Virus record (IMG/VR): IMGVR_UViG_3300020172_001601
Coordinates: 276,342-340,341 of that record
Length of the DNA: 64,000 bases
Reading direction: 5' to 3' (one strand)
Position 1 is the first letter of the stretch; each line of letters starts with the position of its first letter. A model generated the notes under the pieces. It was not told where the DNA came from and did no database searches. It worked only from the letters and a program-made list of their open reading frames with translations. A program made the translations under genes and the position numbers. Of this stretch, positions 1 through 16,809 are shown one piece after another.

Positions 1-67
1 GCCCGGCTGCGAAGGCAGATGTAGGTCCAGTGTACCCTAGTGGGTGTCACCTAACGGGAGAAGTCGA

Positions 68-238
68 ATGTGGTATGTGATCCAAGATGACGATGGACCA
101 TTCCTGACGAATGAAACGCCTGCGGAAACAGATGTGATTCTGTTCCAAGGCACTATTGTCGAGGCCGAACGAGCCTTGCAGCGTGCTTGTGAAGATTGGG
201 AATCCGAACACGACGACATGAACGAGGACTTTCAATGA
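68..238 (+). CDS. small acidic hypothetical protein
   Basis: ATG after GGGAG, just downstream of the repeat at 22. Confidence 0.6.
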   Translation: MWYVIQDDDGPFLTNETPAETDVILFQGTIVEAERALQRACEDWESEHDDMNEDFQ

Positions 239-642
239 TTTTTGTAAGCGTCACAAAGAATGACGGCCAAGCCGTTGTTTCGATCAACGCTGCTCAGGAA
301 AGGAAGTATTTTCCTTTGACGAAGCGGGGTTGTATTGCTGCGGGTAAGTGGCTGGCTGAGATCGGAGCGGATAGTTGGAGCAATAGTTCCAGCGTTGACT
401 TCCCGAAAGAAGTCAAGCCTCGCTTCCGGCACAATGTTTCAGACCTGATGACTGAGGGCTTTCGGTCGGTGCCGCCTGTGGTCCAAGAGACTGTGGTTGG
501 CGACTACGAAATTCGTGGCAATCAATACGTTGCGATTGCCATCAACGTCAAGAACCCGAAGGACTCTCATTACTTCGACCCCGATGTGAACAACAACGCC
601 TTTATTCGAGCCTGTGGTTGGGCTTATGAACCGGAGGACTAA
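235..642 (+). CDS. hypothetical protein
   Basis: ATGA overlap with the previous stop; 135 aa. Confidence 0.7.
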   Translation: MIFVSVTKNDGQAVVSINAAQERKYFPLTKRGCIAAGKWLAEIGADSWSNSSSVDFPKEVKPRFRHNVSDLMTEGFRSVPPVVQETVVGDYEIRGNQYVAIAINVKNPKDSHYFDPDVNNNAFIRACGWAYEPED

Positions 643-894
643 ATGTCTTTTCCAAAAGACGGGACAGTGTTAAATGGGGCATTCTGGCTAAATGGGGAAT
701 CATGGCTAATCATGGAACCCCAAAAGCCACTGAATGAATATCTTGCACAATCATTGCAGGAGCAGCGGCAATACATTGAACGCCTGACCAAAAGGGCAGA
801 CGCACTGGAACAATGGCTGGCTAGGTCCAGTGTACCCTCAAGGGCAAGGAGAACAAAACATGGCAAGTCCTTGGAACGTGGTGGAACTGGTTGA
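643..894 (+). CDS. hypothetical protein (reads through the repeat at 822)
   Basis: ATG abuts the previous TAA; contains repeat-encoded RSSVP. Confidence 0.5.
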   Translation: MSFPKDGTVLNGAFWLNGESWLIMEPQKPLNEYLAQSLQEQRQYIERLTKRADALEQWLARSSVPSRARRTKHGKSLERGGTG

Positions 895-1297
895 GAAGCC
901 GAAAGGCAGTGTTGGCATGAGTCTGGCTGAGGCCGACAAGTTGCTGCGAACTGCGGGATATTTGCAAGGTGATTGGGACTATTTGAAGGACTATCACTTT
1001 GCGAAGTACGTTTACTTCGACATCAACACAGTGGAAGACGTGGAAGCCTTCCTTGTGAAGCTGGACAAGGACAACGAAGACCATACGAAACCTGGGCCAT
1101 TCCGATGGGGCTGCTCGAAGGCGAAGGGCATTCGGTCCTATTTGAAGAATGAAACATGGAAGAAGGACGAAACTTGGCTAAGGGCAGCAATATCCCACAA
1201 TCGTCGCATCATTTGTTCCTGCCATGAGGGTGGGTCATATAAGCGACGGGATGAACTGCCGATTGGTCATCAAGAGAGGCCGTGGGGGATGAAGTAG
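860..1297 (+). CDS. hypothetical protein
   Basis: AGGAG RBS then ATG 860; the stop is the repeat TAG. Confidence 0.8.
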   Translation: MASPWNVVELVEKPKGSVGMSLAEADKLLRTAGYLQGDWDYLKDYHFAKYVYFDINTVEDVEAFLVKLDKDNEDHTKPGPFRWGCSKAKGIRSYLKNETWKKDETWLRAAISHNRRIICSCHEGGSYKRRDELPIGHQERPWGMK

Positions 1298-1349
1298 GTC
1301 CAGTGTACCCTAGCTGGTGTTGAGAGAACGAACTCGAACTGGAGAAATC

Positions 1350-2060
1350 ATGAAAGAACTCGAAGCTGCGTTGAACGAAGAGTTGGCGAAGGTGCTGGGT
1401 GCAAAGCACAACTGGATGGGCGTGATTGCCGGGGTTGCCGGTCGCCGAGCCAGTGAGTTTGCCCGGACGAAGAACGGTTTGCTGGAAGACGTTGTGACCG
1501 ACGTGACTGGCGACATCATTCTTCAGGCGAAGGAAGGCAAGCTGGCGGGTGCGGTGATTCGTGCCAAGGAAGCATCCCATACGGATGAAGAACTGGTGGA
1601 GAACTTACGGCACGTCGTCATGAAGGCGGCGTTCTACCGGGTGAGTGATGCCATGAAGTGGCGCTATCGCAGCGGCACTCAGTTCAGCCAGATCAGTGCT
1701 GAGAATGACTTCTCCGAGACTGTGGAAGCTCGCCCGGAAACCGAAACCGACTTGACCTATTACACGGACCTGTTGGTGAATGAGTTGGAAGTGATGGCGA
1801 CTGCTGCCGACTGGAAGCACAATCGCACCGGGAACCCCAGCTATCCGAAGCAGGCGAAGCGGTTACGGAAGTCCAAGGAAATGGTGCCGGATCGGGTCGA
1901 GGGGATGGCGTTGAAGGATTTGATGGAGAAGTACAGCGTCGGCAGCAAGGGCGGGATGCAACAGCATCTTGACGACATTGGGCAGGCACTTGCCCGTGTT
2001 GCCGGTCGGCTGGGTGATCCTACCTTGGTTCGAGGGACCAAGGGGATCGAGGTTGCTTAG
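1350..2060 (+). CDS. putative sigma-70/ECF-like sigma factor
   Basis: Region-2-like LEDVVTDV...LRHVVMKAAFYRVSDAMKWRYR and region-4 HTH-like RVEGMALKDLMEKYSVGSKGGMQQHL; GGAG RBS; the stop is the repeat TAG. Confidence 0.55.
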   Translation: MKELEAALNEELAKVLGAKHNWMGVIAGVAGRRASEFARTKNGLLEDVVTDVTGDIILQAKEGKLAGAVIRAKEASHTDEELVENLRHVVMKAAFYRVSDAMKWRYRSGTQFSQISAENDFSETVEARPETETDLTYYTDLLVNELEVMATAADWKHNRTGNPSYPKQAKRLRKSKEMVPDRVEGMALKDLMEKYSVGSKGGMQQHLDDIGQALARVAGRLGDPTLVRGTKGIEVA

Positions 2061-2114
2061 GTCCAGTGTACCCTAGTGGGTGTAACAACCCACTAGACTT
2101 TGCGAGGGAATCAA

Positions 2115-2399
2115 ATGCCAAAAGGTCAATTGCCAAAAGATCAAATTGTATATCAGGTCGTCACTAAAGGTGGCGGCGTTGATGGTCGGGACCATACTGA
2201 CAAGGGCGGCAACATCAAGTTCGCATCCTTTGATCGTGCCGAAGCTGAGAAGCAAGTCACGGCATGGGATGACCTGAAGTTGGTTGCCATGAGTGGCAAA
2301 GAATTGCTGGCCCTTAAAAAGAAGGTCTTGGCAAAGTTGGACGGTGTTGAAAAGCTGGTGCTTGAGTTGCCCGCAACGGTGCGGACGAACAATTGGTAG
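2115..2399 (+). CDS. hypothetical protein
   Basis: GAGGG RBS; the stop is the repeat TAG. Confidence 0.75.
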   Translation: MPKGQLPKDQIVYQVVTKGGGVDGRDHTDKGGNIKFASFDRAEAEKQVTAWDDLKLVAMSGKELLALKKKVLAKLDGVEKLVLELPATVRTNNW

Positions 2400-2455
2400 G
2401 TCCAGTGTACCCTAGTGGGTGTAACAGCCCACTGGACTTTGCGAGGAAGTGAACC

Positions 2456-2782
2456 ATGCGATTGAGATATGACTATTCAACAAAGATGTGCCGTGACCGA
2501 TTCGCAAGGATCGAGAAACTCGGCAAGATCAAGTTGGTGCGGGGCTATCGCTACTTTGGCCGGTACAACACGAGCCATGAAGCGGTGCTAGTTGTCGGAG
2601 AGAACGGCACTGCACGCTTCGGCGGGTTGTTGTGGGGTTATGGTGGCGAAGGTCCACGGGGATTGCAGGAACTATTGTTGAAGCTGAATGTGCCAGCGGC
2701 ACAAGCTGAAGCGATTGCTTTCTCAACACCCCGGAAGGATGAGATCGGCGAAGACTGGCGGCTGGTGCTGCCGGTCAACTAG
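2456..2782 (+). CDS. hypothetical protein (WGYGGEGP motif)
   Basis: GAGG RBS; the stop is the repeat TAG. Confidence 0.8.
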   Translation: MRLRYDYSTKMCRDRFARIEKLGKIKLVRGYRYFGRYNTSHEAVLVVGENGTARFGGLLWGYGGEGPRGLQELLLKLNVPAAQAEAIAFSTPRKDEIGEDWRLVLPVN

Positions 2783-2844
2783 GTCCAGTGTACCCTAGTG
2801 GGTGTGCTGGTGAGTGTTTCAAAACCCTGTTTCGGAGAGATCGA

Positions 2845-3111
2845 ATGAGCAAGTCAAGTGCAGTTGTGGTTGTTGGTCGTGGCCGTCCTGAGCAGTACAG
2901 CGCCGGATTCATCCGTGCCTTCAAGGTGATCGTGCGGAAGCACGGTTTGCTGGCGGGTCGGGAGTTCATCAACGCCAACGGCGTGACGGTCGGCGGGAAG
3001 CATCGGGACGTGAGCATCAGCTTGCCGACCCTGAGCAAGTACGTCAAACGTGATGAAGTCGGTGGCAAGGCCGTGCCTCTCTTCCGTGGTCGTCCTACGA
3101 AGGCAGCGTAA
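2845..3111 (+). CDS. small basic protein with two AT-hook-like RGRP motifs
   Basis: GRGRP near the N-terminus and RGRPTK at the C-terminus; GGAG RBS. Confidence 0.7.
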   Translation: MSKSSAVVVVGRGRPEQYSAGFIRAFKVIVRKHGLLAGREFINANGVTVGGKHRDVSISLPTLSKYVKRDEVGGKAVPLFRGRPTKAA

Positions 3112-3266
3112 CCTTCGGGTATGCGGGGCAGGGAATGGTCCCTGCCCTATAGGGTGCTTGGCCTAGCCGAGCAATAGCAATACCCAAATGAGAATCACTG
3201 GGCGGCGTTTAGGTCTAATGTACCCTAGAGGGTGTTGAACACAACATCCTTGAATGCGAGGAAATC

Positions 3267-4091
3267 ATGAGTGGATTTGCAGTCGGAACGTATGTTGGCC
3301 CGGCTGGTGTTCGTCGGCTGTCTTATGAGGACGGGCTGGCGAAGCTGAAGGGAAAAGACCAGAAGAAGTTGGAAAACAACACCTATCTGGTGAAGGTGGA
3401 TGACAAGACGCTGGGCGTGAAACTTCACAATACCATCGTCGTCTACATCTTCAAGAGCGGGGTGTACCAACTGGACACGGGCGGTTGGCGTACCGTGACC
3501 TCAAAGGACCGCATCAACCGATATGGTCCAGCGACGGTGCATCAGAAGAACAACATTTGGTACATCGGTGACGGCATCTATGAGGATGGCGTCCGGGTCA
3601 ATGCTGAAGGCAAGGTGTTGACGCCGCAACGTGGGGTCAAGGTGGTCGAAGCGAAGAAACGCAAGCTGGACCGCATGGTGTTGAAATACATCAAGGGGTT
3701 CGGGGAGCATGTGATTCGCAACGGGTTGCAAGTGGATAAAGCTGACAAGCCCACCGAGCAATCGCCGTGGAAGGTCGTGGAGTTAGTTGAAGGCCCCAAG
3801 CCTATTGCTCCGGGGCCGGGAGACTGTTGGGCGTGTTACTTCGGTATCACGTCAGACGATCCCCTGAAAGAGCCACTAGGGGTCGAGCATCTGCTTGAGC
3901 ATATGCTCGAAGCATACTTCGTCCCCAGCTTACTCTGGAAGGCGATTGTGGCGAATGGGTATCAAAACCCCGGCTTCATCTGGCATAGCATTGCCAGCGA
4001 TGCCCGGCGTGGCGAAAGCCGGTTCCTAAGTCGTGTCCTGACTGCCTACTTCCGAAAGCGGAAACCGGCACTGTTGGACTTGATGGAATAA
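3267..4091 (+). CDS. hypothetical phage protein
   Basis: 274-aa ORF, GAGG RBS, followed by a hairpin. Confidence 0.85.
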   Translation: MSGFAVGTYVGPAGVRRLSYEDGLAKLKGKDQKKLENNTYLVKVDDKTLGVKLHNTIVVYIFKSGVYQLDTGGWRTVTSKDRINRYGPATVHQKNNIWYIGDGIYEDGVRVNAEGKVLTPQRGVKVVEAKKRKLDRMVLKYIKGFGEHVIRNGLQVDKADKPTEQSPWKVVELVEGPKPIAPGPGDCWACYFGITSDDPLKEPLGVEHLLEHMLEAYFVPSLLWKAIVANGYQNPGFIWHSIASDARRGESRFLSRVLTAYFRKRKPALLDLME

Positions 4092-4097
4092 AAAACA

Positions 4098-4140
4098 GGA
4101 ACCCGCCATGAACTGAATCATGTGCGGGTTCTCTTGATTT
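4098..4140 (+). terminator. hairpin / putative terminator
   Basis: GAACCCGC...GCGGGTTC followed by TCTTGATTT. Confidence 0.5.
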
Positions 4141-4165
4141 ACAACTTGTGAAAGGCTGGTGGACA

Positions 4166-4465
4166 ATGAACGCTGTTGGATTGAAGAACTTTACTGAACA
4201 GGTGATAAACTCGCCTGAACCCGTGCTGGTTGACTTCTGGGCAAGTTACTGCGCTCCATGCCGGGCGTTAAAGCCGATCCTGAATGAAGTGTCAGCGACG
4301 GGGGCCAAGGTTGTGACGGTGGACATAACCGAGGAACCTGAACTGACTGCCCACTACGGCATCACTGCAATTCCTACGTTGGTCGTCTTCAAGGGCGGGC
4401 AACCGGGCCAGCGGGTTGTCGGGGTGAAGAAGAAGGACGAACTTCTGCAACTCATCAGTGCCTAA
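4166..4465 (+). CDS. trxA: thioredoxin
   Basis: VLVDFWASYCAPC active site, cis-Pro motif AIPTL, 99 aa. Confidence 0.9.
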   Translation: MNAVGLKNFTEQVINSPEPVLVDFWASYCAPCRALKPILNEVSATGAKVVTVDITEEPELTAHYGITAIPTLVVFKGGQPGQRVVGVKKKDELLQLISA

Positions 4466-4547
4466 ACCGTGTGCCGCCTTCGGGCGGCAACACCTTGCGA
4501 AGTCTAGTGTACCCTACGGGGTGTTCCAAGAAAGAAGAGGAGCTACT

Positions 4548-5153
4548 GTGAATGAGCTTGCGATTGCACGCCCCGGAAGTCTTGATCCCCGAACCCGTGT
4601 TCGTCACGGCAGAGAACGTGAACGGCAGATCGCCGTTGCGTTGAAGGATCAAGTGGGCCTCCCCATTACTGATGCCACTGAGTTCGAGGACAAAGAACGC
4701 AAGGTTGACCGATGGATCGCCTATCCTTCGGGCCGAGTTGCCCTTCAGATCAAATACCGAGAAGTCGGGGAAGACCTTCTGTTCGAGGTCTACGACAAGT
4801 TCTTCGGTTGGGATGATCCGAAGAACAAGCTGGGCCGGGATATGTTCGGCGATGCCAAGGAGTACGCCGTGCTGCTGGCTGACCGTCATACCGTCGTGAT
4901 GGTTCCGACACAGCTTGCCAAGGATACCGTCGCCAAGATGACGGAGAAGGCACGCAAAGAAGGTTTCACGCATGGAGCGGTGAGTTCAACTCTCCGCTAC
5001 TATGTTCACGGCCTGAAGCTGGAATTGAAGGTCCAGCGTGATCCCGGCGACGGACGCCAGAAGATGGTGGCATACATCCCCGCCAGCTACTTCGTGGCCG
5101 AGGCTCAAGCCAAGGTTTACCAAGTGGCACTGCCGAAGAAGTGGCAATCGTAG
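4548..5153 (+). CDS. putative PD-(D/E)XK-family nuclease
   Basis: G.E.E helix, KVD...LQIK motif; GTG start after GAGGAG; the stop is the repeat TAG. Confidence 0.55.
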   Translation: MNELAIARPGSLDPRTRVRHGRERERQIAVALKDQVGLPITDATEFEDKERKVDRWIAYPSGRVALQIKYREVGEDLLFEVYDKFFGWDDPKNKLGRDMFGDAKEYAVLLADRHTVVMVPTQLAKDTVAKMTEKARKEGFTHGAVSSTLRYYVHGLKLELKVQRDPGDGRQKMVAYIPASYFVAEAQAKVYQVALPKKWQS

Positions 5154-5206
5154 CTCCAGTGTACCCTATGGGGTGTGAAGACAATATTGCACCCCATAGG
5201 GAGATG

Positions 5207-5431
5207 ATGATGAGCATTGAACGACAACTTGTGAAGGGAGTAACGACGACTGATGTTGCCGAAGTCGTCAAGGTCAATGAGTGCATTCGCTACATTGAAT
5301 CTTGCGGCTGGTTGTTGAAGCAACGTGCCAGGGGCTATTACTACTTTCGCAACGAAAACGCCAATGAAGGTCAGCGAGACATGACTTTTTCCTTGGCAGA
5401 ACTTCGGGAGGCATACCACAATGGATGGTAA
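5207..5431 (+). CDS. hypothetical protein
   Basis: GGGAG RBS after the repeat at 5151. Confidence 0.65.
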   Translation: MMSIERQLVKGVTTTDVAEVVKVNECIRYIESCGWLLKQRARGYYYFRNENANEGQRDMTFSLAELREAYHNGW

Positions 5432-5627
5432 AGTCAAAATAAGTCACAACTATTGGTGGGAAAACGCAGTGTATTACAGGCGTTCCATCTGCGGCGGCAA
5501 TATTCAGGTCTGGAACGGTCGAATATGGACTGATGCTGCCGAGTCCTGACTTATACTGACTATTGCATACCCTTCTCCATAGGGAGTATGGGGAAGAAAG
5601 TCAGGTCTATTGTACCCTAGCCGGTGT

Positions 5628-5930
5628 AATCGCAAATTACAACACCCAGCACGGGTGGAACGCCGAGAGCCACAGGAGTAAGCACAGAAAGCATCCTCGC
5701 TGCGAAAACAATCGAGGATCGACCCGGAATAAGCCGGTCAGACAGAGTGTGAAGGCAAGAGGGTAAGCCCCTCCCACAATATATCACTCTGAATCAGTGT
5801 GGCCACACTGAGTCTGATCGAACGAAGAAGGGCAGTGCCGAAACGACTGGACGGGCGAAAGTCAGTCACTTGCTGTTGCACAGTGCATCGAAGACCGAAG
5901 GGGACGCCCTTCGGTTTTTCTTTTTTCATT
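5628..5930 (+). ncRNA. candidate structured non-coding RNA filling one repeat unit
   Basis: No RBS-led ORF; nested stems (ATCCTCG/CGAGGAT, CAGAGTG/CACTCTG, TCAGAC/GTCTGA, 18-bp palindrome 5794-5811); ends in a terminator. Confidence 0.5.
5895..5927 (+). terminator. intrinsic terminator
   Basis: ACCGAAGGG-ACG-CCCTTCGGT plus T tract. Confidence 0.85.
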
Positions 5931-5984
5931 TTGTTTAGGTCTATTGTACCCTAGCTGGCACAACCCCTAACGAAAGGCAATGCG

Positions 5985-6173
5985 ATGAACGAACAAGAAT
6001 GGCTGGAAGCATTCAATGCCGAGTTCCTGCGTAAAACCGGCATCACATGGGCAGACGGTGGGCTGGAAGATCAGGACGCCATCAATCGCTACTTCCCGGA
6101 AGACGTGAAAGACGCTGTTCTCCAGCACATGGAGAAATACGACTTGGACGACGTGACCCAACTGTGGGCATAG
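5985..6173 (+). CDS. small acidic hypothetical protein
   Basis: The stop is the repeat TAG. Confidence 0.75.
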   Translation: MNEQEWLEAFNAEFLRKTGITWADGGLEDQDAINRYFPEDVKDAVLQHMEKYDLDDVTQLWA

Positions 6174-6192
6174 GTCCAGTGTACCCTATTGG

Positions 6193-6324
6193 GTGTAATC
6201 GACCCGGCAACGCCCGAAAGATTCTAGGCAAGTACGGCGTAACCGTGACATTCCGATCATCCTGTTCACCGGCCTGCGGGTCAAAGGGGATAGAGAGTCG
6301 GGTCGATTACATTCTTTTTCTTTT
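6193..6324 (+). ncRNA. candidate structured RNA or leader closed by a 16-bp stem
   Basis: 6193-6208 pairs with 6297-6312 (2 G-U), followed by a T tract. Confidence 0.45.
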
Positions 6325-6337
6325 AGGAGAACCTGCG

Positions 6338-6502
6338 GTGAAGAAAAAATACCTTATTGCTCTGCCTTCTTTCCCTAATTCCAAGGGATTCAATCATCGA
6401 ACCATTCTTGTCAGTGCAACCGACAAGAACGATGCCGTTAGCCTTGCCCGGCATTTGCGTCCGGGTGAAAACATTGGCGACATCAAGGAAGTGAACTACT
6501 AG
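6338..6502 (+). CDS. small hypothetical protein
   Basis: AGGAG RBS, GTG start; the stop is the repeat TAG. Confidence 0.65.
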   Translation: MKKKYLIALPSFPNSKGFNHRTILVSATDKNDAVSLARHLRPGENIGDIKEVNY

Positions 6503-6558
6503 GTCCAGTGTACCCTAGTGGGTGTAACGATCACTCAACCCCTGCGAAAGAAACGACA

Positions 6559-6990: not shown

Positions 6991-6998
6991 CACTGACC

Positions 6999-7429: not shown

Positions 7430-7439
7430 GGAAAGAACA

Positions 7440-9749: not shown

Positions 9750-9805
9750 TAGGTCTAGTGTACCCTAGTGTGTGTAACGAACACTCAACCCTGCGAGACA
9801 AGAAC

Positions 9806-10171: not shown

Positions 10172-10303
10172 TACAACGCAGACTAGGCCAGTCTGCGGGG
10201 GAGCCAACGAGCGGCTATGCCAAGCAGGAAACTCCCCTGAAATCACAGGTCCAGTGTACCCTGGTGGGTGTGAATAACACCCACCACTTCTAAGGAATGC
10301 GAG

Positions 10304-10531
10304 TTGACTTACCAAGAATTGAAAGCAAAGGTCAGTGCAGCACTTGGCGACGTTGGATTTTCCATCGAAGCGACGGACGACGGCCAGTTGGTCATTTATA
10401 CCGACTTGAAAGAAGTCGAAGATCAGGACGAACTGGAGAACTACGAGCCGACGAATGAACCCTTGGAATCATTGGACGACTTTCTGAGAGAAGAGTTGGG
10501 CGACAAAGACGCTTCCCTGTTTCTCAAGTAG
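10304..10531 (+). CDS. acidic hypothetical protein
   Basis: AAGGA RBS, TTG start; the stop is the repeat TAG. Confidence 0.7.
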   Translation: MTYQELKAKVSAALGDVGFSIEATDDGQLVIYTDLKEVEDQDELENYEPTNEPLESLDDFLREELGDKDASLFLK

Positions 10532-10585
10532 GTCCAGTGTACCCTAGTGGGTGTAACGAACAACCTCAACACGGAGAACTCTGCG

Positions 10586-10816
10586 ATGGCTATTACGCTG
10601 ACCCCTTCCTATGGTCGTGACTACAAGAACGGCAAAGAAGTCCAAGAAGCCTGGGACGCTGGCAAGGACTTCACGATCAACTCCATCGGCCACCCGGACG
10701 ATGGGCGGCAGATCAACAAGCAGGACGCCGAACGTGAGGGCGGCACCTTCAACATCCGGTACAAAAAACTGACCCAGATCAAGGTCATCAAGGTCAAGAA
10801 GGTCGCTGCGGCTTAG
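10586..10816 (+). CDS. hypothetical protein (LTPSYGRDYK motif)
   Basis: GGAG RBS; the stop is the repeat TAG. Confidence 0.85.
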   Translation: MAITLTPSYGRDYKNGKEVQEAWDAGKDFTINSIGHPDDGRQINKQDAEREGGTFNIRYKKLTQIKVIKVKKVAAA

Positions 10817-10842
10817 GTCCAGTGTACCTTACACAGTGTAAC

Positions 10843-11053
10843 GCCTCCCAAACATCGGCCTTGGGCAAGCCAATCAATCAGAATAAAGGAACCCCTTCCC
10901 ATGAATGTCTGAAGTCCGCTAACTCCCCGGCGTAGTCATCCACGTTAGAGCGGGGCGGGACTGCAAAGCGATGGCCGCACGTCAGCAATGGGCAGCATTG
11001 TGCTGGCTGACGTGTGAATGAAGTGCCTCCCAAACATTGGCCTTGGGCAAGCC
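10843..11053 (+). repeat. pair of 29-bp direct repeats in a non-coding unit
   Basis: GCCTCCCAAACAT(C/T)GGCCTTGGGCAAGCC at 10843-10871 and 11025-11053. Confidence 0.9.
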
Positions 11054-11067
11054 GAAAGCAAATGCGT

Positions 11068-11100
11068 AGGGCAGGACCAACCTGCCCTTTTTTTGTTTTT
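11068..11100 (+). terminator. intrinsic terminator
   Basis: AGGGCAGG-ACCAA-CCTGCCCT plus T tract. Confidence 0.85.
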
Positions 11101-11149
11101 GTTTGTGTAGGTCTATTGTACCCTAGAGGGTGTAACAAGCGAACAACAT

Positions 11150-11287
11150 GGCGGCGTAGCTCAACTGGCTAGAGCAACCATCATTATCGTAGCGATTGAT
11201 CGGGGGTCCACGGTCAATGCGGCCAACGTGTGTACAGCGTTGGTTTGAGAGGATGGGAAGACGGGGGTTCGATGCCCTCCGCTGTCT
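11150..11287 (+). ncRNA. tRNA-like RNA with the anticodon loop replaced by a ~70-nt insert
   Basis: Acceptor GGCGGCG/CGCTGTC, TA, D arm GCTC-AACTGGCTA-GAGC, stem CCATC/GATGG, 5-nt variable loop, T arm GGGGG-TTCGATG-CCCTC; no encoded CCA. Confidence 0.8.
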
Positions 11288-11402
11288 GCTTACACTGTAG
11301 GGCATTTGCCCGAACAACGAGGCGTCAGAACACGCCTACAACCCCGAAAGGGGAGAGAGTGTAAGGTAGCCGTAGTGTACCCTAGTGGGCAGGAGAACAA
11401 CA

Positions 11403-11561
11403 ATGCGAAAAACTGAAGGGGCAACCAAAGCCCACGCCTCTGTCGGGTATCACAAACACCTTCGACCATTCGGCAAGCGACTGGCGAACAAAGCCACTCG
11501 CAAGAATGGCAAGCGTAGCACCAGTGTACCCTATGGGGCAGGAGACAAACATGGAAATTGA
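11403..11561 (+). CDS. small basic protein
   Basis: AGGAG RBS; MRKTEGATKAHASVGYHKHLRPFGKRLANK...; reads through the repeat at 11516; below the ORF-track cut-off. Confidence 0.55.
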   Translation: MRKTEGATKAHASVGYHKHLRPFGKRLANKATRKNGKRSTSVPYGAGDKHGN

Positions 11562-11922
11562 AGACGTGCGAAATACCCGATCCATGAGAATGGACCCGGA
11601 AAGCCCTGCGGAATACGACGAGATGGACGCCATCACCGCTGGCCCCAATGGTATGAAATTGATGCCAGTGTTCAGCGGTGAGATGTTTCAACAGTCCGTT
11701 GCCTATCCCGTCATCGTGGAAGCATGGGACAAGAAGAACAGCGGACGCCACAAACGCCGATGGGAAGCGACATTCACCCAAGCCGAACGGAACAAGATCA
11801 GCCGGTATTATGGCCGGTTTTACCGCTGGTATCTGGTCAGCGGCACGCCCAAACGTGTGTCACTGCAATTGAACACCTTGACCCTCCTGCAAAGGGCAGT
11901 GAACTTCTTCGCTGAATGTTAG
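11551..11922 (+). CDS. hypothetical protein
   Basis: AGGAG RBS; the stop is the repeat TAG. Confidence 0.8.
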   Translation: MEIEDVRNTRSMRMDPESPAEYDEMDAITAGPNGMKLMPVFSGEMFQQSVAYPVIVEAWDKKNSGRHKRRWEATFTQAERNKISRYYGRFYRWYLVSGTPKRVSLQLNTLTLLQRAVNFFAEC

Positions 11923-11943
11923 GGCTAGTGTACCCTAGAGGGC

Positions 11944-12237
11944 ATGATGAAAGACGCATACGGAAACGATCAAGTATATCTGGTCCAGCCCACAACTCTG
12001 GACTATGAGATCAGCTATGGTGGCGATGGTGTCAAAACATGCCAAGAGGGACGCTATCGACACTATTTCACTGCCAGTGCTGGCGGTTTGTCGGGTAGCA
12101 TTAGAATTCAATTGAACCGAGTCAGCGCCGAACGGTTTGCTGCCTATAACGGCCTGCGGTTGATAACCGACGTTGAACGTGAAGAAATTCAAGAAAGGTG
12201 GAGCGTCAGAGTGCCGGATTGGTCCAGTGTACCCTAG
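11944..12237 (+). CDS. hypothetical protein
   Basis: Starts 6 nt after the 18-bp repeat core; ends WSSVP* inside the next repeat. Confidence 0.65.
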   Translation: MMKDAYGNDQVYLVQPTTLDYEISYGGDGVKTCQEGRYRHYFTASAGGLSGSIRIQLNRVSAERFAAYNGLRLITDVEREEIQERWSVRVPDWSSVP

Positions 12238-12274
12238 ACGGTGTAACGATCACTCAACCCTGCGGAGAATGACA

Positions 12275-12526
12275 ATGGTTCAATTGAAAGTCGTGGCTGT
12301 GTCGAGCAACCACAATAGTTTCGGCCTGCGAAACATGATCCTCATCGGGGACAATGGCGAAGGCTGGCAAGCTGCGGCCAATGACCTGAACGTGAAGCCG
12401 AAGGATACCATCCTGCGGATACCCGAAGGGCAGGACATTCCCACGTTCCTGACGCTGCAATCTTTCGAGATTCCTTCACAACTGGCCGACCCGCCTGCCG
12501 AACTATTGAAAGAAGTTTGGGGCTAG
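12275..12526 (+). CDS. hypothetical protein
   Basis: GGAG RBS; the stop is the repeat TAG. Confidence 0.8.
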   Translation: MVQLKVVAVSSNHNSFGLRNMILIGDNGEGWQAAANDLNVKPKDTILRIPEGQDIPTFLTLQSFEIPSQLADPPAELLKEVWG

Positions 12527-12584
12527 GTCCAGTGTACCCTAGAGGGTGTAAGGAACACTTCAGTCCTCTGCGAAAGGCAATGCG

Positions 12585-12920
12585 ATGTTGAGCCACAAAA
12601 TTGCGATTTACATTCCTTCCACTGTCAACGGCAATCAGCCCGCCCCGGTTGATATGATCGAACGGTGGGTGCGGGCCAGCAAGATCAAGCTGGCCAACCT
12701 GTTCGGTGGGTTTACGACCTACAACGGGCAAGGGGGATGGTACTCGCCCGAACACGGTTTGATCGAAGAGAACGTGATTATCGTTCAAGCGTTCACCGAT
12801 CAAGAGGGGCTGACCAAACTGGACAAAGTGAACGAACTGGCGAAGGAAATCGCCAGCGACATGGGCCAGGAAATGGTGTCGGTCGAAGTCGATGGAACAC
12901 TCAACTTCGTGACAGCGTAA
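12585..12920 (+). CDS. DUF3574-like / PII-fold-like hypothetical protein
   Basis: FGGFTTYNGQGGW...E...GQEMV pattern. Confidence 0.55.
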   Translation: MLSHKIAIYIPSTVNGNQPAPVDMIERWVRASKIKLANLFGGFTTYNGQGGWYSPEHGLIEENVIIVQAFTDQEGLTKLDKVNELAKEIASDMGQEMVSVEVDGTLNFVTA

Positions 12921-12925
12921 GGCAG

Positions 12926-12955
12926 GGACGGGCAGTAATGCCCGTCTTTTTTTCT
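12926..12955 (+). terminator. intrinsic terminator
   Basis: GACGGGCA-GTAA-TGCCCGTC plus T tract. Confidence 0.85.
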
Positions 12956-12988
12956 GAGTTTGTGTAGGTCTATTGTACCCTAGAGAAC

Positions 12989-13255
12989 ATGAGAGTCAGC
13001 AACACATTATTGATTTCCCTGTTTTATGAACCGGGAACGTCACATATTGCCGGAATTGAAAACCGAGCAATACAAGCGATGGAATTGGGGATGATTTCAG
13101 AACTCCCCAAGATCACTGTGGCGAAAAGTGAGAAGACACCATTCTGGCACTTGAAGCTGGAAGTCAAGGATGAAGATCGGCCATTCTGGTTCGGTTTTTA
13201 CTTAGGGAAAGACTTCTGCATCAACAATCGACCAATCACTGTCGGCTGTGATTAG
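12989..13255 (+). CDS. hypothetical protein
   Basis: Starts 6 nt after the repeat core; the stop is the repeat TAG. Confidence 0.7.
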   Translation: MRVSNTLLISLFYEPGTSHIAGIENRAIQAMELGMISELPKITVAKSEKTPFWHLKLEVKDEDRPFWFGFYLGKDFCINNRPITVGCD

Positions 13256-13309
13256 GTCCAGTGTACCCTAGAGGGTGTAAGGAACACTTAACCCCCTGCG
13301 AGATACGCC

Positions 13310-13495
13310 ATGCCGAAGAAAATGGATCATGCCGCCTACCAACGTGGTCTGCGGTCGAAGTCGGTTGCTCAACTCCAATTTATTGCGAAGGATGCCAACG
13401 AAGCCGCCACGGTTAACCCGCAAGGCGAAAACGCTGGCTACTACGCCGACGAAGTGCATTATGCACTCGCCGAACTCAAACGTCGTCAAGGATGA
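13310..13495 (+). CDS. small hypothetical protein
   Basis: 61 aa after the repeat at 13253. Confidence 0.75.
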   Translation: MPKKMDHAAYQRGLRSKSVAQLQFIAKDANEAATVNPQGENAGYYADEVHYALAELKRRQG

Positions 13496-13671
13496 AAAAC
13501 ATGAAACTGGCAAGCATAGCGGTCGCATTCCTCCTGTTGGCGGGATGCGCCGCTCCTCCGAGACATTGGGAAGCTCCCCGTGAGCATTACCACAAGGAAT
13601 TAAGCGTCGAAGTCCGGGAAAGCGGCGATGGCCGTCCCCAAGTCGTTGCTACGTTCAAAATCACCAACTAG
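13492..13671 (+). CDS. small lipoprotein
   Basis: MKNMKLASIAVAFLLLAG-C lipobox; ATGA overlap; the stop is the repeat TAG; 59 aa, absent from the ORF track. Confidence 0.75.
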   Translation: MKNMKLASIAVAFLLLAGCAAPPRHWEAPREHYHKELSVEVRESGDGRPQVVATFKITN

Positions 13672-13725
13672 GTCCAGTGTACCCTATATGGTGTGAAGGA
13701 CACCAACAAAAAGGGAAACCAAGCC

Positions 13726-13911
13726 ATGCACACAACGACCGCACGAAAGGACAACAAGAAAACAACAATCGTTCTGCCGCCGCTTCCACCGTGGCAAGTG
13801 GCGAAGGGACACCAACAACACCGTGGCGGGGCAGGCACTCACGCCGACCGCCGCACGAACCGTCAACGGACACGAGCCGCCCAACAACGGGCAGCAGTGT
13901 CAGATGACTGA
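13726..13911 (+). CDS. small basic protein
   Basis: Arg-rich AGTHADRRTNRQRTR. Confidence 0.65.
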   Translation: MHTTTARKDNKKTTIVLPPLPPWQVAKGHQQHRGGAGTHADRRTNRQRTRAAQQRAAVSDD

Positions 13912-14093
13912 AAGGCACCATCATGTGCAAACTAAACTCTAAGGCAAGGAGGCTGCAAAAGGCAAGACGTTGGGCTGAAAAGATGCTGATCGACCTGAAG
14001 ACGTGGCCCGGTGGACTTGAAGACTTCGCCGAAGCACTTAGGTCCAGTGTACCCTATATGGTGTGAAGAACACTCAACCCTGCGAGATCAATC

Positions 14094-14321
14094 ATGAAGA
14101 CCGAACCGAAGACGTTCCGCTTGGGCAGCAACGACATGGTTTCTGCCCCCGGCATCCTCAAGTGGGCCATGAATGGCTACAAATTCAAACGTGACCGCAA
14201 GAAGATGGTCAACGTGATGAAAGCGTGGGAGGGCCTGACCGATGCCCAATGGGGCAAGGTGCTGGCGGGTGAAATCCCCCACACCATCGAAGGCGATGTC
14301 GTGGTAATCACCATCGAATGA
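14094..14321 (+). CDS. hypothetical protein
   Basis: ORF between a repeat and a terminator. Confidence 0.8.
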   Translation: MKTEPKTFRLGSNDMVSAPGILKWAMNGYKFKRDRKKMVNVMKAWEGLTDAQWGKVLAGEIPHTIEGDVVVITIE

Positions 14322-14325
14322 CAAC

Positions 14326-14356
14326 AAAGGGCAGCAAGTCGCTGCCCTTTTCTTTT
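14326..14356 (+). terminator. intrinsic terminator (same hairpin as at 16169)
   Basis: AAAGGGCAGC-AAGTC-GCTGCCCTTT plus T tract. Confidence 0.85.
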
Positions 14357-14414
14357 ATGTTTTTGTGTAGGTCTATTGTACCCTAGTGGGTGTCACACAA
14401 AGGAGACAATTGCG

Positions 14415-14762
14415 ATGATTACCAAAGTATCTGCTGACACGTTTCACAATGATGTTTACCACCACGATGGCCCTGTCGTCGTGACCTTCGGCTATACGGG
14501 CTGCGGCCCATGCCGTTCCTTGCAACCCAGCCTTGAGAAGCTGGCCGAAACTGGCGTCAAGGTCGTCAAGGTCGATATTGTCGATGACCCTGACATTGCC
14601 ACGCACTTCGGCATCAGCAGCGTGCCGACAACCCTGTTCTTCGCCCGTGGCGAACCACGATTGTCGTTCAATGGCGTTGCCAACGTCAAGAAGCTGCAAG
14701 CACTGCTGGCTGAAGCCGTGGCCGATGGCGAGAAGTCGCCCGCCGACCACGCCCATGCCTAG
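14415..14762 (+). CDS. thioredoxin-family protein
   Basis: VVVTFGYTGCGPC, SSVPT cis-Pro motif; the stop is the repeat TAG. Confidence 0.88.
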   Translation: MITKVSADTFHNDVYHHDGPVVVTFGYTGCGPCRSLQPSLEKLAETGVKVVKVDIVDDPDIATHFGISSVPTTLFFARGEPRLSFNGVANVKKLQALLAEAVADGEKSPADHAHA

Positions 14763-14816
14763 CCCTAGTGTACCCTATAGGGTGTGATGGAACGAAACCT
14801 TCAACGGAGAACTGCG

Positions 14817-15056
14817 ATGGCTAACGGTTGGCATGAAGACTTTGAAGACGAAACCTTCCCGCCCGAACTGCACGAGCAGGAAGACTGGAGCGAACTCGAA
14901 GAAGACTTCGACGACGAAGAGTTCGACGATGACGAATTCGAGGACGATGACGGCGAACTGGCCCGTGACCTGATCCTTGAACGTCAGGAACTCGAAGACT
15001 TCGAGGGCCTTGATCCCTTCGAGGATCGCTACGACTACGAAGGCGACGGCTTCTAA
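14817..15056 (+). CDS. extremely acidic small protein
   Basis: 38 of 79 residues are D/E, no Lys; GGAG RBS. Confidence 0.8.
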   Translation: MANGWHEDFEDETFPPELHEQEDWSELEEDFDDEEFDDDEFEDDDGELARDLILERQELEDFEGLDPFEDRYDYEGDGF

Positions 15057-15065
15057 GGGCAACGA

Positions 15066-15100
15066 AGGACAGGGAAAGCCTCCCTGTCCTTTTTCTTTCT
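15066..15100 (+). terminator. intrinsic terminator
   Basis: AGGACAGGGA-AAGCC-TCCCTGTCCT plus T tract. Confidence 0.85.
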
Positions 15101-15172
15101 GAGTTTGTGTAGGTCTATTGTACCCTAGTGGGTGTGTCGAAGAGAACGAAACCTGTCCAACGGAGAACTGCA

Positions 15173-15358
15173 ATGGTGACTGCGACCATCGAAGGCAACG
15201 AACTCGTGATTCGCCTTCCCCTCAACACGCCCCGGCCCAGCGCCACGGGCAAGACGCTCGTGGTTGCCACGAGCAGCGGCAACAAGGCCACCGAAGCCGA
15301 AGTCAACGGGCAAAAGGTAGTCGTCGGCGTCAACGCCTACATCTACCCGCCCAAATAG
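15173..15358 (+). CDS. small hypothetical protein (SATGKTLVVAT motif)
   Basis: GGAG RBS, strong codon bias. Confidence 0.8.
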   Translation: MVTATIEGNELVIRLPLNTPRPSATGKTLVVATSSGNKATEAEVNGQKVVVGVNAYIYPPK

Positions 15359-15438
15359 TCAACAAAAGGCAACACTAGGGTACGTCCAGTGTACCCTAGT
15401 GTGTGTTGGGATCAATCACCTTCACTCAAGGATCGACC

Positions 15439-15684
15439 ATGCGAGTATTGGCTAAGACGTTCGGCTGGCTTGTCGTCAGTGGGCTTATCATCTTCATCAG
15501 CAACCTGAGCGCCGGTGTCGATTGGAAAGTCGCCCTGATCGGTGCGGCTGTTGCGAAGATCGGCACGACCATTGCCTACTTCTTCTACGAAATCGGCTTC
15601 GAGAAGGCGTGGAAACGTCAGCCAAAGGCAACGACGGTCACGGCAACAACGGCATCGGCAACGCCATGCCCTTGCCCGGCTTAG
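15439..15684 (+). CDS. DUF2061-like membrane protein
   Basis: R..AKT..W, two hydrophobic segments, YFFYE...W; the stop is the repeat TAG. Confidence 0.6.
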   Translation: MRVLAKTFGWLVVSGLIIFISNLSAGVDWKVALIGAAVAKIGTTIAYFFYEIGFEKAWKRQPKATTVTATTASATPCPCPA

Positions 15685-15752
15685 GGCTAGTGTACCCTAG
15701 AGGGTGTCCAACACGGACGAACGACAACCCCCTGCGAATGAGGAACTGAGTT

Positions 15753-16160
15753 ATGGCCACTACTGAAGTCAAGCTGGTATCGGAAATCATCGAAGCTGTC
15801 CCCGGCGTCAAGCGTGCGTTCCACGTCTTCACGCCAGCCCTTCAGCATCGCCTTGAGAACAACGCCAGCAACCTGCCGGTGATGGCCCTGCGGTCTTCAA
15901 TCCACAACTACGGCAAGATGAAGCTGTACGCTCGCATCGAATGCCTTGGGCCGTCCAGCCTTGACCCGCTGTTCGGCAACCCACTGCCCGGCACGGGTGG
16001 CCGTGGCGTGGCAATCATGTTCACCGAATTCCCCCTTCGGGTATGGTATCCCGAAGGGCAAAAGCCCCCGGTCGTTGACACGCCGGACGGACGCAACCCG
16101 AAGGACATACTTGAGGAAGTCAAGCTCAAGTATGAACTCGCCTTCCACGACGATTTCTAA
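15753..16160 (+). CDS. hypothetical protein
   Basis: GAGGA RBS, followed by a terminator. Confidence 0.85.
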   Translation: MATTEVKLVSEIIEAVPGVKRAFHVFTPALQHRLENNASNLPVMALRSSIHNYGKMKLYARIECLGPSSLDPLFGNPLPGTGGRGVAIMFTEFPLRVWYPEGQKPPVVDTPDGRNPKDILEEVKLKYELAFHDDF

Positions 16161-16168
16161 TCGTCAGG

Positions 16169-16200
16169 AAAGGGCAGCAAGTCGCTGCCCTTTCTTTTTG
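16169..16200 (+). terminator. intrinsic terminator
   Basis: AAAGGGCAGC-AAGTC-GCTGCCCTTT plus T tract. Confidence 0.85.
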
Positions 16201-16514
16201 TTTATGTTTGTGTAGGTCTATTGTACCCTAGAGGGCAAGGAGATCGGCACATGACCTTTCGAGAGTGGTATCGGATGACCGAACGTGAGATTCGGTGGAA
16301 TCGCAGTTTCCTGTATCGTGTCTTCAACAAGATCGGACTCGCATGATTCGCAAAGCTCTGGCCTTCGTGGTCAACGTCTTCAACTTCCTCGTTCCTGCGA
16401 ACCAAGGGCCGCAACCGACGCCGCCCAACTACTTCGGCCCCTGCCCGTAGTAGGTCAAGTGTACCCTAGTGAGTGCGGGCAATGTCGCCCGCCTCACTCT
16501 TGGGGTTTTACAAA

Positions 16515-16655
16515 ATGAAAAAGAAACATCGCAACGACAAGAACCACGGGCGCAACGGCTGGGTCGGTGGCAACCCACGCTATGCGGGCAAGGGATTCAA
16601 GAAGGGCGACCGAGCCAAGGCAAAGGCCGAAGCCCGTAGGTCCAGTGTACCCTAG
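16515..16655 (+). CDS. small basic protein
   Basis: Lys/Arg-rich; ends RSSVP* inside a repeat. Confidence 0.55.
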   Translation: MKKKHRNDKNHGRNGWVGGNPRYAGKGFKKGDRAKAKAEARRSSVP

Positions 16656-16729
16656 TGAGCTAGTGTACCCTATGGTGCATAGTGCATAGTGCATAGCATA
16701 GACTATGCACTTCTTTATTCAAAGAAGCA

Positions 16730-16809
16730 TAGGGTACAATAGCCCTAACAATGTTGCATAATTAAAAACAAAACAATTATTCGAGAAAACATTGGGTACA
16801 ATAGACCTA
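16730..16809 (-). repeat. two inverted copies of the array element
   Basis: Reverse complement of 16730-16747 is TAGGGCTATTGTACCCTA; of 16792-16809 is TAGGTCTATTGTACCCAA. Confidence 0.92.

What the first reader, a model, noticed from the sequence alone, without database searches (positions are those of the whole stretch)
22..16809. Repeat-delimited gene-cassette array: ~43 copies of one 26-bp element, each heading a 1-3 gene or ncRNA unit
Seen: a 26-bp element recurs in one orientation every ~150-1300 bp for at least 16.7 kb (the array probably continues left of the window). It is usually followed by a short leader and a small + strand gene, it is absent from the remaining 47 kb, and the region looks more GC-rich. 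It matches neither CRISPR repeats, integron attC nor sigma70 promoters. Established: early regions of large phages carry many small host-takeover genes, and in some T4-type phages repeated promoter/stem-loop cassettes mediate module shuffling. Inference: this is an integron-like accessory platform in which one element serves as expression signal (phage-specific promoter or processing site) and as homology or recombination joint for gaining, losing and reordering cassettes. No recombinase or RNA polymerase gene is visible in the window.
Basis: partly seen in the sequence, partly recalled or inferred. Interest (0 to 1): 0.92.

Follow-up and report, generated by a model that had tools for sequence, protein, structure and literature searches.

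The report
Promoter-headed gene cassette array, huge phage
A giant bacteriophage carries a 28-kb block of about 60 small unknown genes, almost every one preceded by the same 19-26-base signal that most likely starts transcription. Comparison with sister phages shows that this signal is also the seam where whole genes are lost, gained or swapped.

Summary
There are 43 same-strand copies of TAGGTCYAKTGTACCCTAG(nGGGTGT) at window 22-16680, against none expected by chance. The array runs another 11 kb to the left, giving 61 copies over 27.8 kb. The element occurs nowhere else in the 340-kb contig.

The window is the right end of a huge myophage genome of at least 390 kb. Each element sits just upstream of a small ORFan gene. 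These genes are under purifying selection.

Two variants exist:
- The TCTATTG variant follows strong intrinsic terminators.
- The TCCAGTG variant lies between genes, and its first TAG often serves as the upstream stop codon.

There are no sigma70-like sites above chance.

Nine related metagenome arrays keep shared units in the same order, but whole units are absent or replaced by unrelated ones. Of 40 breakpoints, 28 lie within -6..+50 of an element (4.9 expected). Clean deletions cross over inside the element.

This is therefore a promoter-cassette hyperplastic region, closest to T4-type PeSLs. It is not an integron. The polymerase is unresolved: a tape-measure-fused RNAP was tested and rejected, and the distant relative LR756511 has an analogous TGTAC-core array, sigma-like genes and no recognisable RNAP.

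The parts
22..16809 (+). In-window part of the cassette array (43 forward units). The whole array is window -11117 to 16809.
22..16662 (+). 26 element copies of the TCCAGTG (internal) type. 26-nt elements start at 22, 822, 1295, 2058, 2397, 2780, 5151, 6171, 6500, 7646, 8325, 8582, 9070, 10246, 10529, 10814, 11516, 12219, 12524, 13253, 13669, 14039, 15381, 16637, plus near-variants at 3210 (TAA) and 16451 (AAG).
   Evidence: across the whole array none of the 34 CAG-type copies has an upstream T-run; the first TAG is the stop codon of the upstream ORF for 19 of the 43 in-window elements (all types counted together).
5602..16238 (+). 9 element copies of the TCTATTG (post-terminator) type, starting at 5602, 5936, 8115, 11108, 12965, 14368, 15110 and 16213, with the related TCTAGTG copy at 7045.
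   Evidence: 11 of 13 TAT-type copies in the whole array have an upstream hairpin plus T-run and a T-rich tract. See also family D10.
4499..16680 (+). TCTAGTG or degenerate copies starting at 4499, 9393, 9750, 11367, 11920, 14760, 15682 and 16655.
5890..16711 (+). Eight strong + strand intrinsic terminators: 5890-5919, 6999-7027, 11068-11088, 12924-12949, 14326-14350, 15064-15092, 16166-16196 and 16688-16711. The first seven are each followed about 20 nt later by an element.
   Evidence: (38 terminator-like sites against 21.2 expected)
8097..8115 (-). Reverse-strand element, back to back with the forward copy at 8115. It faces a 51-aa minus-strand ORF (7935-8090).
   Evidence: The 7932-8152 island is 95% conserved in relatives A and C.
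16729..16747 (-). Reverse-strand element at the right boundary. It converges on the forward copies at 16637 and 16655 across a hairpin.
   Evidence: It is conserved in relatives A, C and E.
16791..16809 (-). Second reverse-strand element (one core mismatch). It is part of a 33-nt direct repeat with 16715-16747.
   Evidence: (D15)
16637..16680 (+). Two elements only 18 nt apart. This is the scar of a cassette of about 290 bp that is still present between them in relative A.
2058..2396 (+). Unit 22, present only in this phage. In relatives A, B and H the junction lies within the shared element plus a 50-nt leader.
5602..5935 (+). Unit 28, absent from B and C. The crossover lies inside the element.
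10246..10528 (+). Unit 40, absent from A and C. The crossover lies inside the element.
11920..12218 (+). Unit 46, absent from C. The crossover is about 26 nt into the element.
13919..14759 (+). Units 52-53 plus the preceding 3' tail, absent from A, C and G. The right breakpoint is exactly at the element start; the left one is just after a stop codon.
8152..9066 (+). Units 34-36, replaced in A and C by unrelated cassettes whose ORFs have no homologue in this array.
12983..13252 (+). Unit 49, replaced in A, C and G by an unrelated 57-aa cassette. Both breakpoints are at elements.
16235..16659 (+). Units 58-60, replaced in A, C and E. Both breakpoints are at elements.
11150..11287 (+). tRNA-Leu(GAG)-like gene with a 62-nt insert in the anticodon loop. 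It forms the body of unit 43 and starts 43 nt after the element start.
   Evidence: Plain ARAGORN misses it.
10814..11107 (+). Unit 42 has no ORF of 35 aa or more that is headed by the element. It carries a 29-nt direct repeat and ends in a terminator.
   Evidence: (D16). There is no Rfam hit and the fold z-score is -0.28.

Best explanation
The interval is the right-hand 60% of a 27.8-kb hyperplastic accessory region of a huge myophage of at least 390 kb. The region is built from about 61 transcription units. Each unit consists of one copy of a 19-26-nt phage-specific promoter, a leader (mostly 30-40 nt, with a GGAG- or GCGAG-type ribosome site) and one to three small genes. Most genes are ORFans; one unit carries a tRNA-like gene.

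Operon-initial copies (TCTATTG type) restart transcription right after intrinsic terminators. Internal copies (TCCAGTG type) sit between genes and overlap the upstream stop codon.

Because the same promoter and leader are repeated in direct orientation, they act as portable homology. Recombination between copies deletes, inserts or swaps whole units, so the gene content turns over quickly while unit order and the signal itself stay fixed.

Status of each step:
- Shown: the repeat, its placement relative to genes and terminators, its restriction to the array, purifying selection on the genes, and the breakpoints at the elements.
- Inferred: that it is a promoter.
- Unresolved: which polymerase reads it. 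The more likely reader is host core RNAP with a phage-encoded or phage-modified specificity factor. A phage RNAP is less likely, because the complete genome of the only distant relative has sigma-like genes and no recognisable RNAP.
For: Repeat statistics.

Orientation follows gene direction, including the reverse copies that face minus-strand ORFs and the divergent pair at the left boundary of relatives B, D, F and I.

ATG distances cluster at 51-59 nt, 36-40 nt and, in a few units, 26 nt from the element start.

Seven strong + strand terminators are each followed only by an element before the next gene. The TAT type goes with a terminator in 11 of 13 copies; the CAG type in 0 of 34.

Sigma70-like sites number 9 against 9.6 expected.

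In orthologous units the element is 96.6% identical, against 83% for the leader further downstream. Gene pN/pS is 0.27 over 61 pairs.

Array proteins are unrelated to each other, with one paralogous pair, and are ORFans.

Cassette maps show conserved order with whole-unit presence, absence and replacement. Of 40 breakpoints, 28 lie within -6..+50 of an element, against 4.9 expected; none of 10,000 randomisations reached 28. Nucleotide-level junctions lie inside the element. Replacement cassettes have no homologue in this array.

The element is absent from the rest of the 340-kb contig and from 185,579 bacterial and archaeal genomes, apart from single chance hits.

LR756511.1 carries an analogous array: 55 copies of T.aAAGCTGTACtaAa over 0.7-19.2 kb.

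Published precedents: PeSLs (PMC2839356, PMC4122927); phiKZ, with 28-32 early promoters and 31-40-nt leaders (PMC8244752); and P23-45, with 14 pre-early promoters in 9 kb (PMC10770324).
Against: There are no transcript 5' ends, so promoter function rests on position and analogy.

No polymerase or sigma factor was tied to the element. No RNAP or sigma gene was found in the window, in 30 kb to the left or in 20 kb to the right. About 280 kb of this genome could not be read.

Part of the 26-nt conservation could come from gene conversion among repeats rather than from recognition.

Twelve of the 40 breakpoints are not at elements (for example window 263/1135 and 7138/7417), so the element is a hot spot and not the only joint.

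Because elements sit at gene boundaries, selection for intact genes would also enrich breakpoints there.

A 5' stem-loop in the leader exists in only a subset of units and is not significant overall.
Confidence: 0.65

Rival explanations
1. The element is an RNA-level signal in long polycistronic transcripts rather than a promoter. It could be a sequence-specific endonuclease processing site or a 5'-UTR binding site.
For: The element lies within or next to transcribed sequence and often overlaps the upstream stop codon. In LR756511 the short motif lies 1-11 nt from many start codons, so it may be part of the mRNA.
Against: Seven strong terminators inside the window's array are each followed by an element and by no other conserved or sigma70-like sequence, so transcription has to restart there. 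Conservation has a sharp 5' edge with nothing upstream. The distance to the ATG varies from 26 to about 70 nt. There is no Rfam match.
Confidence: 0.1
2. These are ordinary early promoters for the unmodified primary sigma holoenzyme of an unknown host. The long conserved block would be kept uniform by recombination among copies, as in T4-type PeSLs.
For: The relative LR756511 has a gp55-like late sigma, which suggests a T4-like programme in which early genes use host RNAP. Positions 12-17 read TACCCT, which fits the TAnnnT pattern of a -10 hexamer. Two units have an ATG exactly 7 nt after it, the geometry of a leaderless mRNA.
Against: There is no -35-like block at 16-18 nt. The second conserved block (AGGTC) lies only 5 nt upstream. 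The sigma70 scan finds nothing at the elements. The element is confined to one region of the genome. No bacterial genome in GTDB has more than one copy. GTAC-containing words are depleted elsewhere in the window.
Confidence: 0.2
3. An integron-like platform: site-specific recombination at the element captures and excises cassettes.
For: Unrelated single-gene cassettes are each bounded by one repeat, with whole-cassette presence or absence among relatives.
Against: No integrase or other site-specific recombinase was found in the window or in the flanks that were read. The element is 19-26 nt and lacks the attC inverted-repeat architecture. Crossover points vary from position 0 to +50, and one junction is a microhomology join. 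Terminators and one promoter-like signal per unit contradict a single Pc promoter.
Confidence: 0.03
4. The element is the promoter of a virion RNA polymerase fused to the giant tape-measure protein, as in Thermus phage P23-45.
For: A 3112-aa tape-measure-like ORF lies in the window (36073-45411) and has a DDDQD string at 803-807, close to the position of DFDGD in P23-45 gp96 (PMC10770324).
Against: The Asp string lies in an unconserved stretch. No acidic triad is conserved among 30-57 homologues. In the AlphaFold model residues 280-680 have pLDDT of about 80-89 and are entirely alpha-helical, with no beta-barrel. Foldseek against the PDB gives no match at E <= 0.001. There is no PDB, Pfam or PHROG sequence hit.
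Confidence: 0.02

Closest known systems
PeSLs (promoter-early stem-loops) of T4-type phages (Arbiol et al. 2010, PMC2839356; Comeau et al. 2014, PMC4122927)
   Same: Small repeated promoter-plus-terminator cassettes sit between non-essential ORFan genes in hyperplastic regions. Insertions, deletions and replacements between close relatives have their ends in the cassettes. The mechanism is homologous recombination between copies. The host virus is a myophage, and its relative carries a gp55-like late sigma.
   Different: The promoter part here does not fit sigma70. It is one contiguous 19-26-nt block with a TGTAC core. The stem-loop terminator accompanies only the TCTATTG subclass. The copies form one dense 28-kb array of 61 rather than being scattered over several regions. 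The phage has a genome of at least 390 kb. Mini-circles were not testable.
Early-promoter clusters of phages with their own transcription start machinery: phiKZ vRNAP promoters (PMC8244752) and P23-45 pre-early promoters (PMC10770324)
   Same: Dozens of copies of one strongly conserved phage-specific motif head short early operons. Leaders of about 30-40 nt are found in phiKZ. P23-45 has 14 promoters in 9 kb.
   Different: Those motifs are AT-rich and are read by identified virion RNAPs. Here no RNAP was found, and the tape-measure-fusion model was tested and rejected.
T7-group single-subunit RNAP promoters
   Same: A contiguous, sharply bounded conserved block of about 23-26 nt followed by a G-rich start region. 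Many copies lie in one orientation in front of genes, and a terminator hairpin with a U-run is used.
   Different: No T7-like RNAP was detected in the window, in its flanks or in the complete LR756511 genome (phmmer E > 0.5). There is no sequence resemblance beyond chance.
Integron cassette arrays
   Same: Unrelated single-gene cassettes are each bounded by a repeat, with cassette turnover between relatives.
   Different: There is no integrase, attI or attC, and every cassette has its own expression signal. Junction positions vary.

Membership tests
PeSL-type regulatory cassette (T4-type phages) | A repeated short regulatory cassette lies between small non-essential genes in a hyperplastic region. 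| tested here: met
   61 copies in 27.8 kb. The genes are ORFans under purifying selection.
PeSL-type regulatory cassette (T4-type phages) | The promoter part is a strong sigma70-like early promoter. | tested here: not met
   There is no -35/-10 pair at any element. The region holds 9 sigma70-like sites against 9.6 expected.
PeSL-type regulatory cassette (T4-type phages) | The cassette contains a stem-loop that terminates transcription. | tested here: inconclusive
   Present upstream of 11 of 13 TCTATTG-type copies and absent from all 34 TCCAGTG-type copies.
PeSL-type regulatory cassette (T4-type phages) | Indel and replacement breakpoints between close relatives fall in the cassettes. | tested here: met
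   28 of 40 breakpoints against 4.9 expected. The junctions are shown base by base.
PeSL-type regulatory cassette (T4-type phages) | Mini-circles arise from exchange between neighbouring cassettes. | not testable with these tools
   This needs reads or PCR.
Integron | An IntI tyrosine recombinase gene lies next to the array. | tested here: not met
   None in the window, in 30 kb to the left or in 20 kb to the right. The rest of the genome was not read.
Integron | attC sites (imperfect inverted repeats of 55-140 nt) bound promoterless cassettes expressed from one Pc promoter. | tested here: not met
   The element is 19-26 nt and direct. Internal terminators are each followed by an element.
CRISPR array | Regularly spaced repeats separated by spacers of about 25-75 bp. 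| tested here: not met
   Spacing is 18-1754 bp and the intervals are coding.
T7-like RNAP promoter | A cognate single-subunit RNAP gene is present in the genome. | tested here: inconclusive
   None in about 110 kb of this phage nor in the whole 595-kb relative. About 280 kb of this genome is unread.
phiKZ-like vRNAP early promoter | Phage multisubunit RNAP (beta' DFDGD motif) and an AT-rich motif. | tested here: not met
   The motif is GC-rich. There is no DFDGD-type ORF in LR756511. This phage was only partly read.
P23-45-type tape-measure-fused virion RNAP | A two-barrel RNAP domain with a conserved DxDxD motif at the N-terminus of the tape-measure protein. | tested here: not met
   The conserved core is all alpha-helical, has no conserved Asp triad and has no structural match.

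The most novel reading that the evidence does not exclude
A lineage of huge phages (this one and LR756511) may express a large, fast-evolving accessory gene set from initiator-type promoters with a TGTAC core. These promoters would be read by machinery that is not yet recognisable. Candidates are a phage sigma or split sigma delivered or made very early, or an RNAP with no detectable similarity to known families. The same promoter array would serve as the lineage's general gene-swapping platform.
Probability: 0.15. Interest if true: 0.8.

Novelty: new variant of a known kind. Interest (0 to 1): 0.55.

Why it matters
The PeSL principle, in which repeated regulatory cassettes act as portable homology for shuffling accessory genes, now appears far outside the classical T4 group. 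It is seen in uncultivated huge phages and with a promoter that is not sigma70-like. The region gives a clean natural system: 61 copies, nine sister arrays and base-resolved junctions. That system can measure how fast phage accessory genes turn over. It also yields two covarying promoter sequences, from this phage and from LR756511, that could be used to find the transcription factor or polymerase these phages use. The roughly 60 ORFan genes are candidates for host-takeover or anti-defence functions.

Tried and rejected
1. N4-like or crAss-like virion RNAP for the 3112-aa ORF. Its composition is typical of a tape measure, it lacks a DxDGD motif, and it has no Pfam, PHROG or PDB hit.
2. P23-45-type tape-measure-fused RNAP. 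Rejected using the alignment, the AlphaFold model and Foldseek.
3. A general 5' stem-loop in the leader. It is present in some units, but the mean z-score is -0.19 over 122 leaders.
4. A short-core version of the element elsewhere in this genome. None was found, and GTAC-containing words are in fact depleted.
5. An IMG/VR scan for the beta' motif NADFDGD, meant to catch an RNAP gene on this contig.
6. Walking along the 390-kb ENA contig. Thirty kb to the left and 20 kb to the right showed no RNAP, sigma or integrase. I stopped because coverage per look-up was too low.
7. RNAP in LR756511. Regular-expression searches and phmmer with T7 RNAP were negative, and the ten largest ORFs are not RNAPs.
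8. Homologues in this phage of the LR756511 sigma-like proteins. Two searches found nothing.
9. Literature search for either motif. Nothing relevant was found.
10. Unit 42 as a structured ncRNA. There is no support.
11. megablast against GenBank phages. No match.

Full report
WHAT IS THERE

A repeat search finds one family of direct repeats across window 1-17000. The 19-mer TAGGTCCAGTGTACCCTAG with up to three mismatches occurs 39 times. All hits are on the + strand and all lie between 22 and 16655; no shuffle gave a single hit. Seeding on the invariant core gives 43 forward copies in the window.

The other 47 kb holds only three one-mismatch 12-mers. GC is 53.2% inside the array and 46.0% outside.

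A position-by-position profile of 122 distinct copies, taken from this phage and its relatives, shows three things:
- The 5' edge is sharp, and information content upstream of position 1 is close to zero.
- Positions 1-19 are strongly conserved.
- Positions 21-26 (GGGTGT) are moderately conserved, with a weak tail to about position 35.

WHERE THE WINDOW COMES FROM

An exact-pattern scan of IMG/VR shows that the window is the last 64 kb (276342-340341) of the 340,341-bp contig IMGVR_UViG_3300020172_001601.

The array continues 11 kb to the left. In all there are 61 forward copies over 27,772 bp, with a median spacing of 376 bp. A relaxed scan (AGGTC-N3-TGTACCCTA) hits this contig nowhere else. 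A scan of 185,579 bacterial and archaeal genomes gives only single scattered hits.

A 390,142-bp ENA contig carries the same phage. It ends at the same right end as the IMG/VR contig.

The rest of the window encodes myophage baseplate proteins, a tyrosyl-tRNA synthetase, a CCA-adding enzyme and a 3112-aa tape-measure-like protein. The only GenBank relative is the 595-kb uncultured huge phage LR756511.1, whose baseplate protein is 46% identical at the amino-acid level.

ANATOMY OF A UNIT

The first ATG that opens an ORF lies at one of three distances from the element start:
- mostly 51-59 nt;
- 36-40 nt in a second group, where AAGGAGA follows the element directly;
- 26 nt in a few units.

For 19 of the 43 window copies (27 of 61 overall), the first three bases, TAG, are the stop codon of the upstream ORF.

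There are two main variants of the element:
- TCTATTG type, 13 copies. Eleven of them are preceded by a strong hairpin, a T-run and a T-rich tract.
- TCCAGTG type, 34 copies. None of them has such a preceding terminator.

Seven strong + strand intrinsic terminators lie inside the window's array. Each is followed about 20 nt later by an element. No other conserved or sigma70-like sequence lies before the next gene. Sigma70-like sites number 9 against 9.6 expected.

Reverse-strand copies face minus-strand ORFs. One sits back to back with the forward copy at 8115. In the relatives a divergent pair marks the left boundary of the array, next to leftward genes.

The proteins have almost no family matches: one AAA+ ATPase and two weak DUF or PHROG hits. 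They are unrelated to each other apart from one paralogous pair. They are nevertheless real genes, because pN/pS is 0.27 over 61 orthologous pairs.

One unit carries a tRNA-Leu-like gene with a 62-nt insert in the anticodon loop. One unit has no ORF and shows no sign of a structured RNA.

COMPARISON WITH SISTER ARRAYS

A metagenome scan brought in nine related arrays from one sediment series. They are 79-97% identical to this phage where they can be aligned. I cut every array at its elements and clustered the unit bodies.

Shared units keep one order in all relatives, but whole units differ:
- Units 22, 28, 40, 46 and 52-53 of this phage are missing from one or more relatives.
- Units 9-10, 16, 19-20, 33-36, 49 and 58-60 are replaced.
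- The replacement ORFs have no homologue in this array.

There are 20 distinct events and therefore 40 breakpoints. Of these, 28 lie between -6 and +50 of an element start, a zone that covers 12% of the array. The expected number is 4.9, and none of 10,000 randomisations reached 28.

Read base by base, the clean deletions switch partner inside the element or its leader, with 21-50 nt of shared sequence. The two elements only 18 nt apart at 16637 and 16655 are the scar of a cassette that is still present in relative A.

Some events do not follow the rule. Twelve breakpoints lie elsewhere, and several of those fall at 3' ends of genes. Only one 104-nt promoter-leader piece is found at a different position in a relative, so reordering is not supported.

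HOW IT MOST LIKELY WORKS

The element is best read as a promoter. Four observations point that way:
- It is orientation-specific with respect to genes.
- It has a sharp upstream edge.
- It is the only signal that can restart transcription after seven internal terminators.
- It is more conserved between orthologous units (96.6%) than the leader that follows it.

The direct repetition of promoter plus leader then supplies homology for unequal exchange. That explains the cassette turnover, which is directly observed. This is the logic of the T4-type PeSLs. Site-specific, integron-like recombination is not supported, because there is no recombinase in the sequence I could read, no attC-like structure and no fixed crossover point.

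WHO READS THE PROMOTER

This question remains open.
- The window and about 50 kb of flanks hold no RNAP or sigma gene.
- A paper on Thermus phage P23-45 describes a virion RNAP fused to the tape-measure protein, so I tested the 3112-aa ORF for the same arrangement. Its N-terminal domain is conserved in many huge phages. It has no conserved acidic triad, is predicted with good confidence to be entirely helical and matches no RNAP fold. That idea is rejected.

I then read the whole LR756511.1 genome.
- It has an analogous array: 55 forward copies of T.aAAGCTGTACtaAa between 0.7 and 19.2 kb, each followed by a leader and a small gene.
- It also has a shorter motif, AGCTGTAC, on the reverse strand. 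The motif often lies 1-11 nt from start codons and runs out to about 300 kb. There are 134 hits against about 18 expected.
- The two phages therefore share the architecture and a TGTAC core, but not the flanking bases.
- LR756511 has no DFDGD-type or T7-like RNAP detectable by motif search or phmmer.
- It does encode a gp55-like late sigma, a 335-aa protein matching sigma-70 region 2 and a 129-aa protein matching region 4 only.

On balance this favours host core RNAP steered by a phage factor. However, it rests on a distant relative, and I could not find the counterparts in this phage.

VERDICT

It is wrong in calling the array integron-like and in expecting reordering. The closest known system is the PeSL. 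This case differs from it in promoter type, copy density and host virus, so I rate it a new variant of a known kind and of moderate interest.

Noticed in passing
window 11150-11287 (+); a second copy lies at window -986 to -838, left of the window (L010): Two tRNA-like genes, Leu(GAG) and Ala(TGC), each have a 62-65-nt insert between anticodon-loop positions 33 and 34. ARAGORN finds them only when introns are allowed. The Leu copy is conserved with the same insert in relatives A and C. The insert is too short for a group I intron.
   Followed up: partly
window 36073-45411 (+): A 3112-aa tape-measure-like protein has an N-terminal domain (about residues 230-700, all helical) that is 40-57% identical to giant proteins (1,700-5,400 aa) on contigs of up to 673 kb. 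It matches no Pfam or PHROG family.
   Followed up: yes
window 17001-64000, both strands: Words containing GTAC are strongly depleted outside the array. GTGTAC occurs 0 and 2 times against about 11.5 expected per strand, and GTACC 14 and 9 times against about 46. This suggests avoidance of a restriction site or of stray promoter cores.
   Followed up: no
window 16637-16809: At the right boundary, two forward and two reverse elements face each other within 170 bp. Between them lie a triple GTGCATA repeat and two hairpins. This could give short convergent or antisense RNAs, or act as an insulator. It is conserved in relatives A, C and E.
   Followed up: partly
LR756511.1 (loci L301-L312): 0.7-19.2 kb on the + strand and 19-300 kb on the - strand: This distant 595-kb relative has its own array of 55 copies of T.aAAGCTGTACtaAa. 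It also has a genome-wide AGCTGTAC motif just upstream of start codons on one strand. In addition it has 63 tRNAs, a gp55-like sigma, and separate proteins matching sigma region 2 and region 4, which may form a split sigma.
   Followed up: partly
leaders throughout window 22-16809, for example 7080-7096, 9790-9805 and 13293-13309: Many leaders carry CCCTGCGAGA or TGCGAG 5-10 nt before the ATG in place of a canonical GGAGG. This may be a variant ribosome-binding motif or a further regulatory site.
   Followed up: no
window 64000 (contig end): The 340-kb IMG/VR contig and the independent 390-kb ENA contig stop at the same right end. This hints at a real genome terminus or at a repeat that breaks assemblies.
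   Followed up: no
window 16984-17451, compared with L103: Relative E carries a 2.9-kb insertion just right of the array where this phage has 467 bp.
   Followed up: no
window 263-1135: Relatives A and B lack 872 bp running from inside unit 19 to inside unit 20. The junction has a 17-nt overlap and is not at an element. It leaves a chimeric unit.
   Followed up: partly
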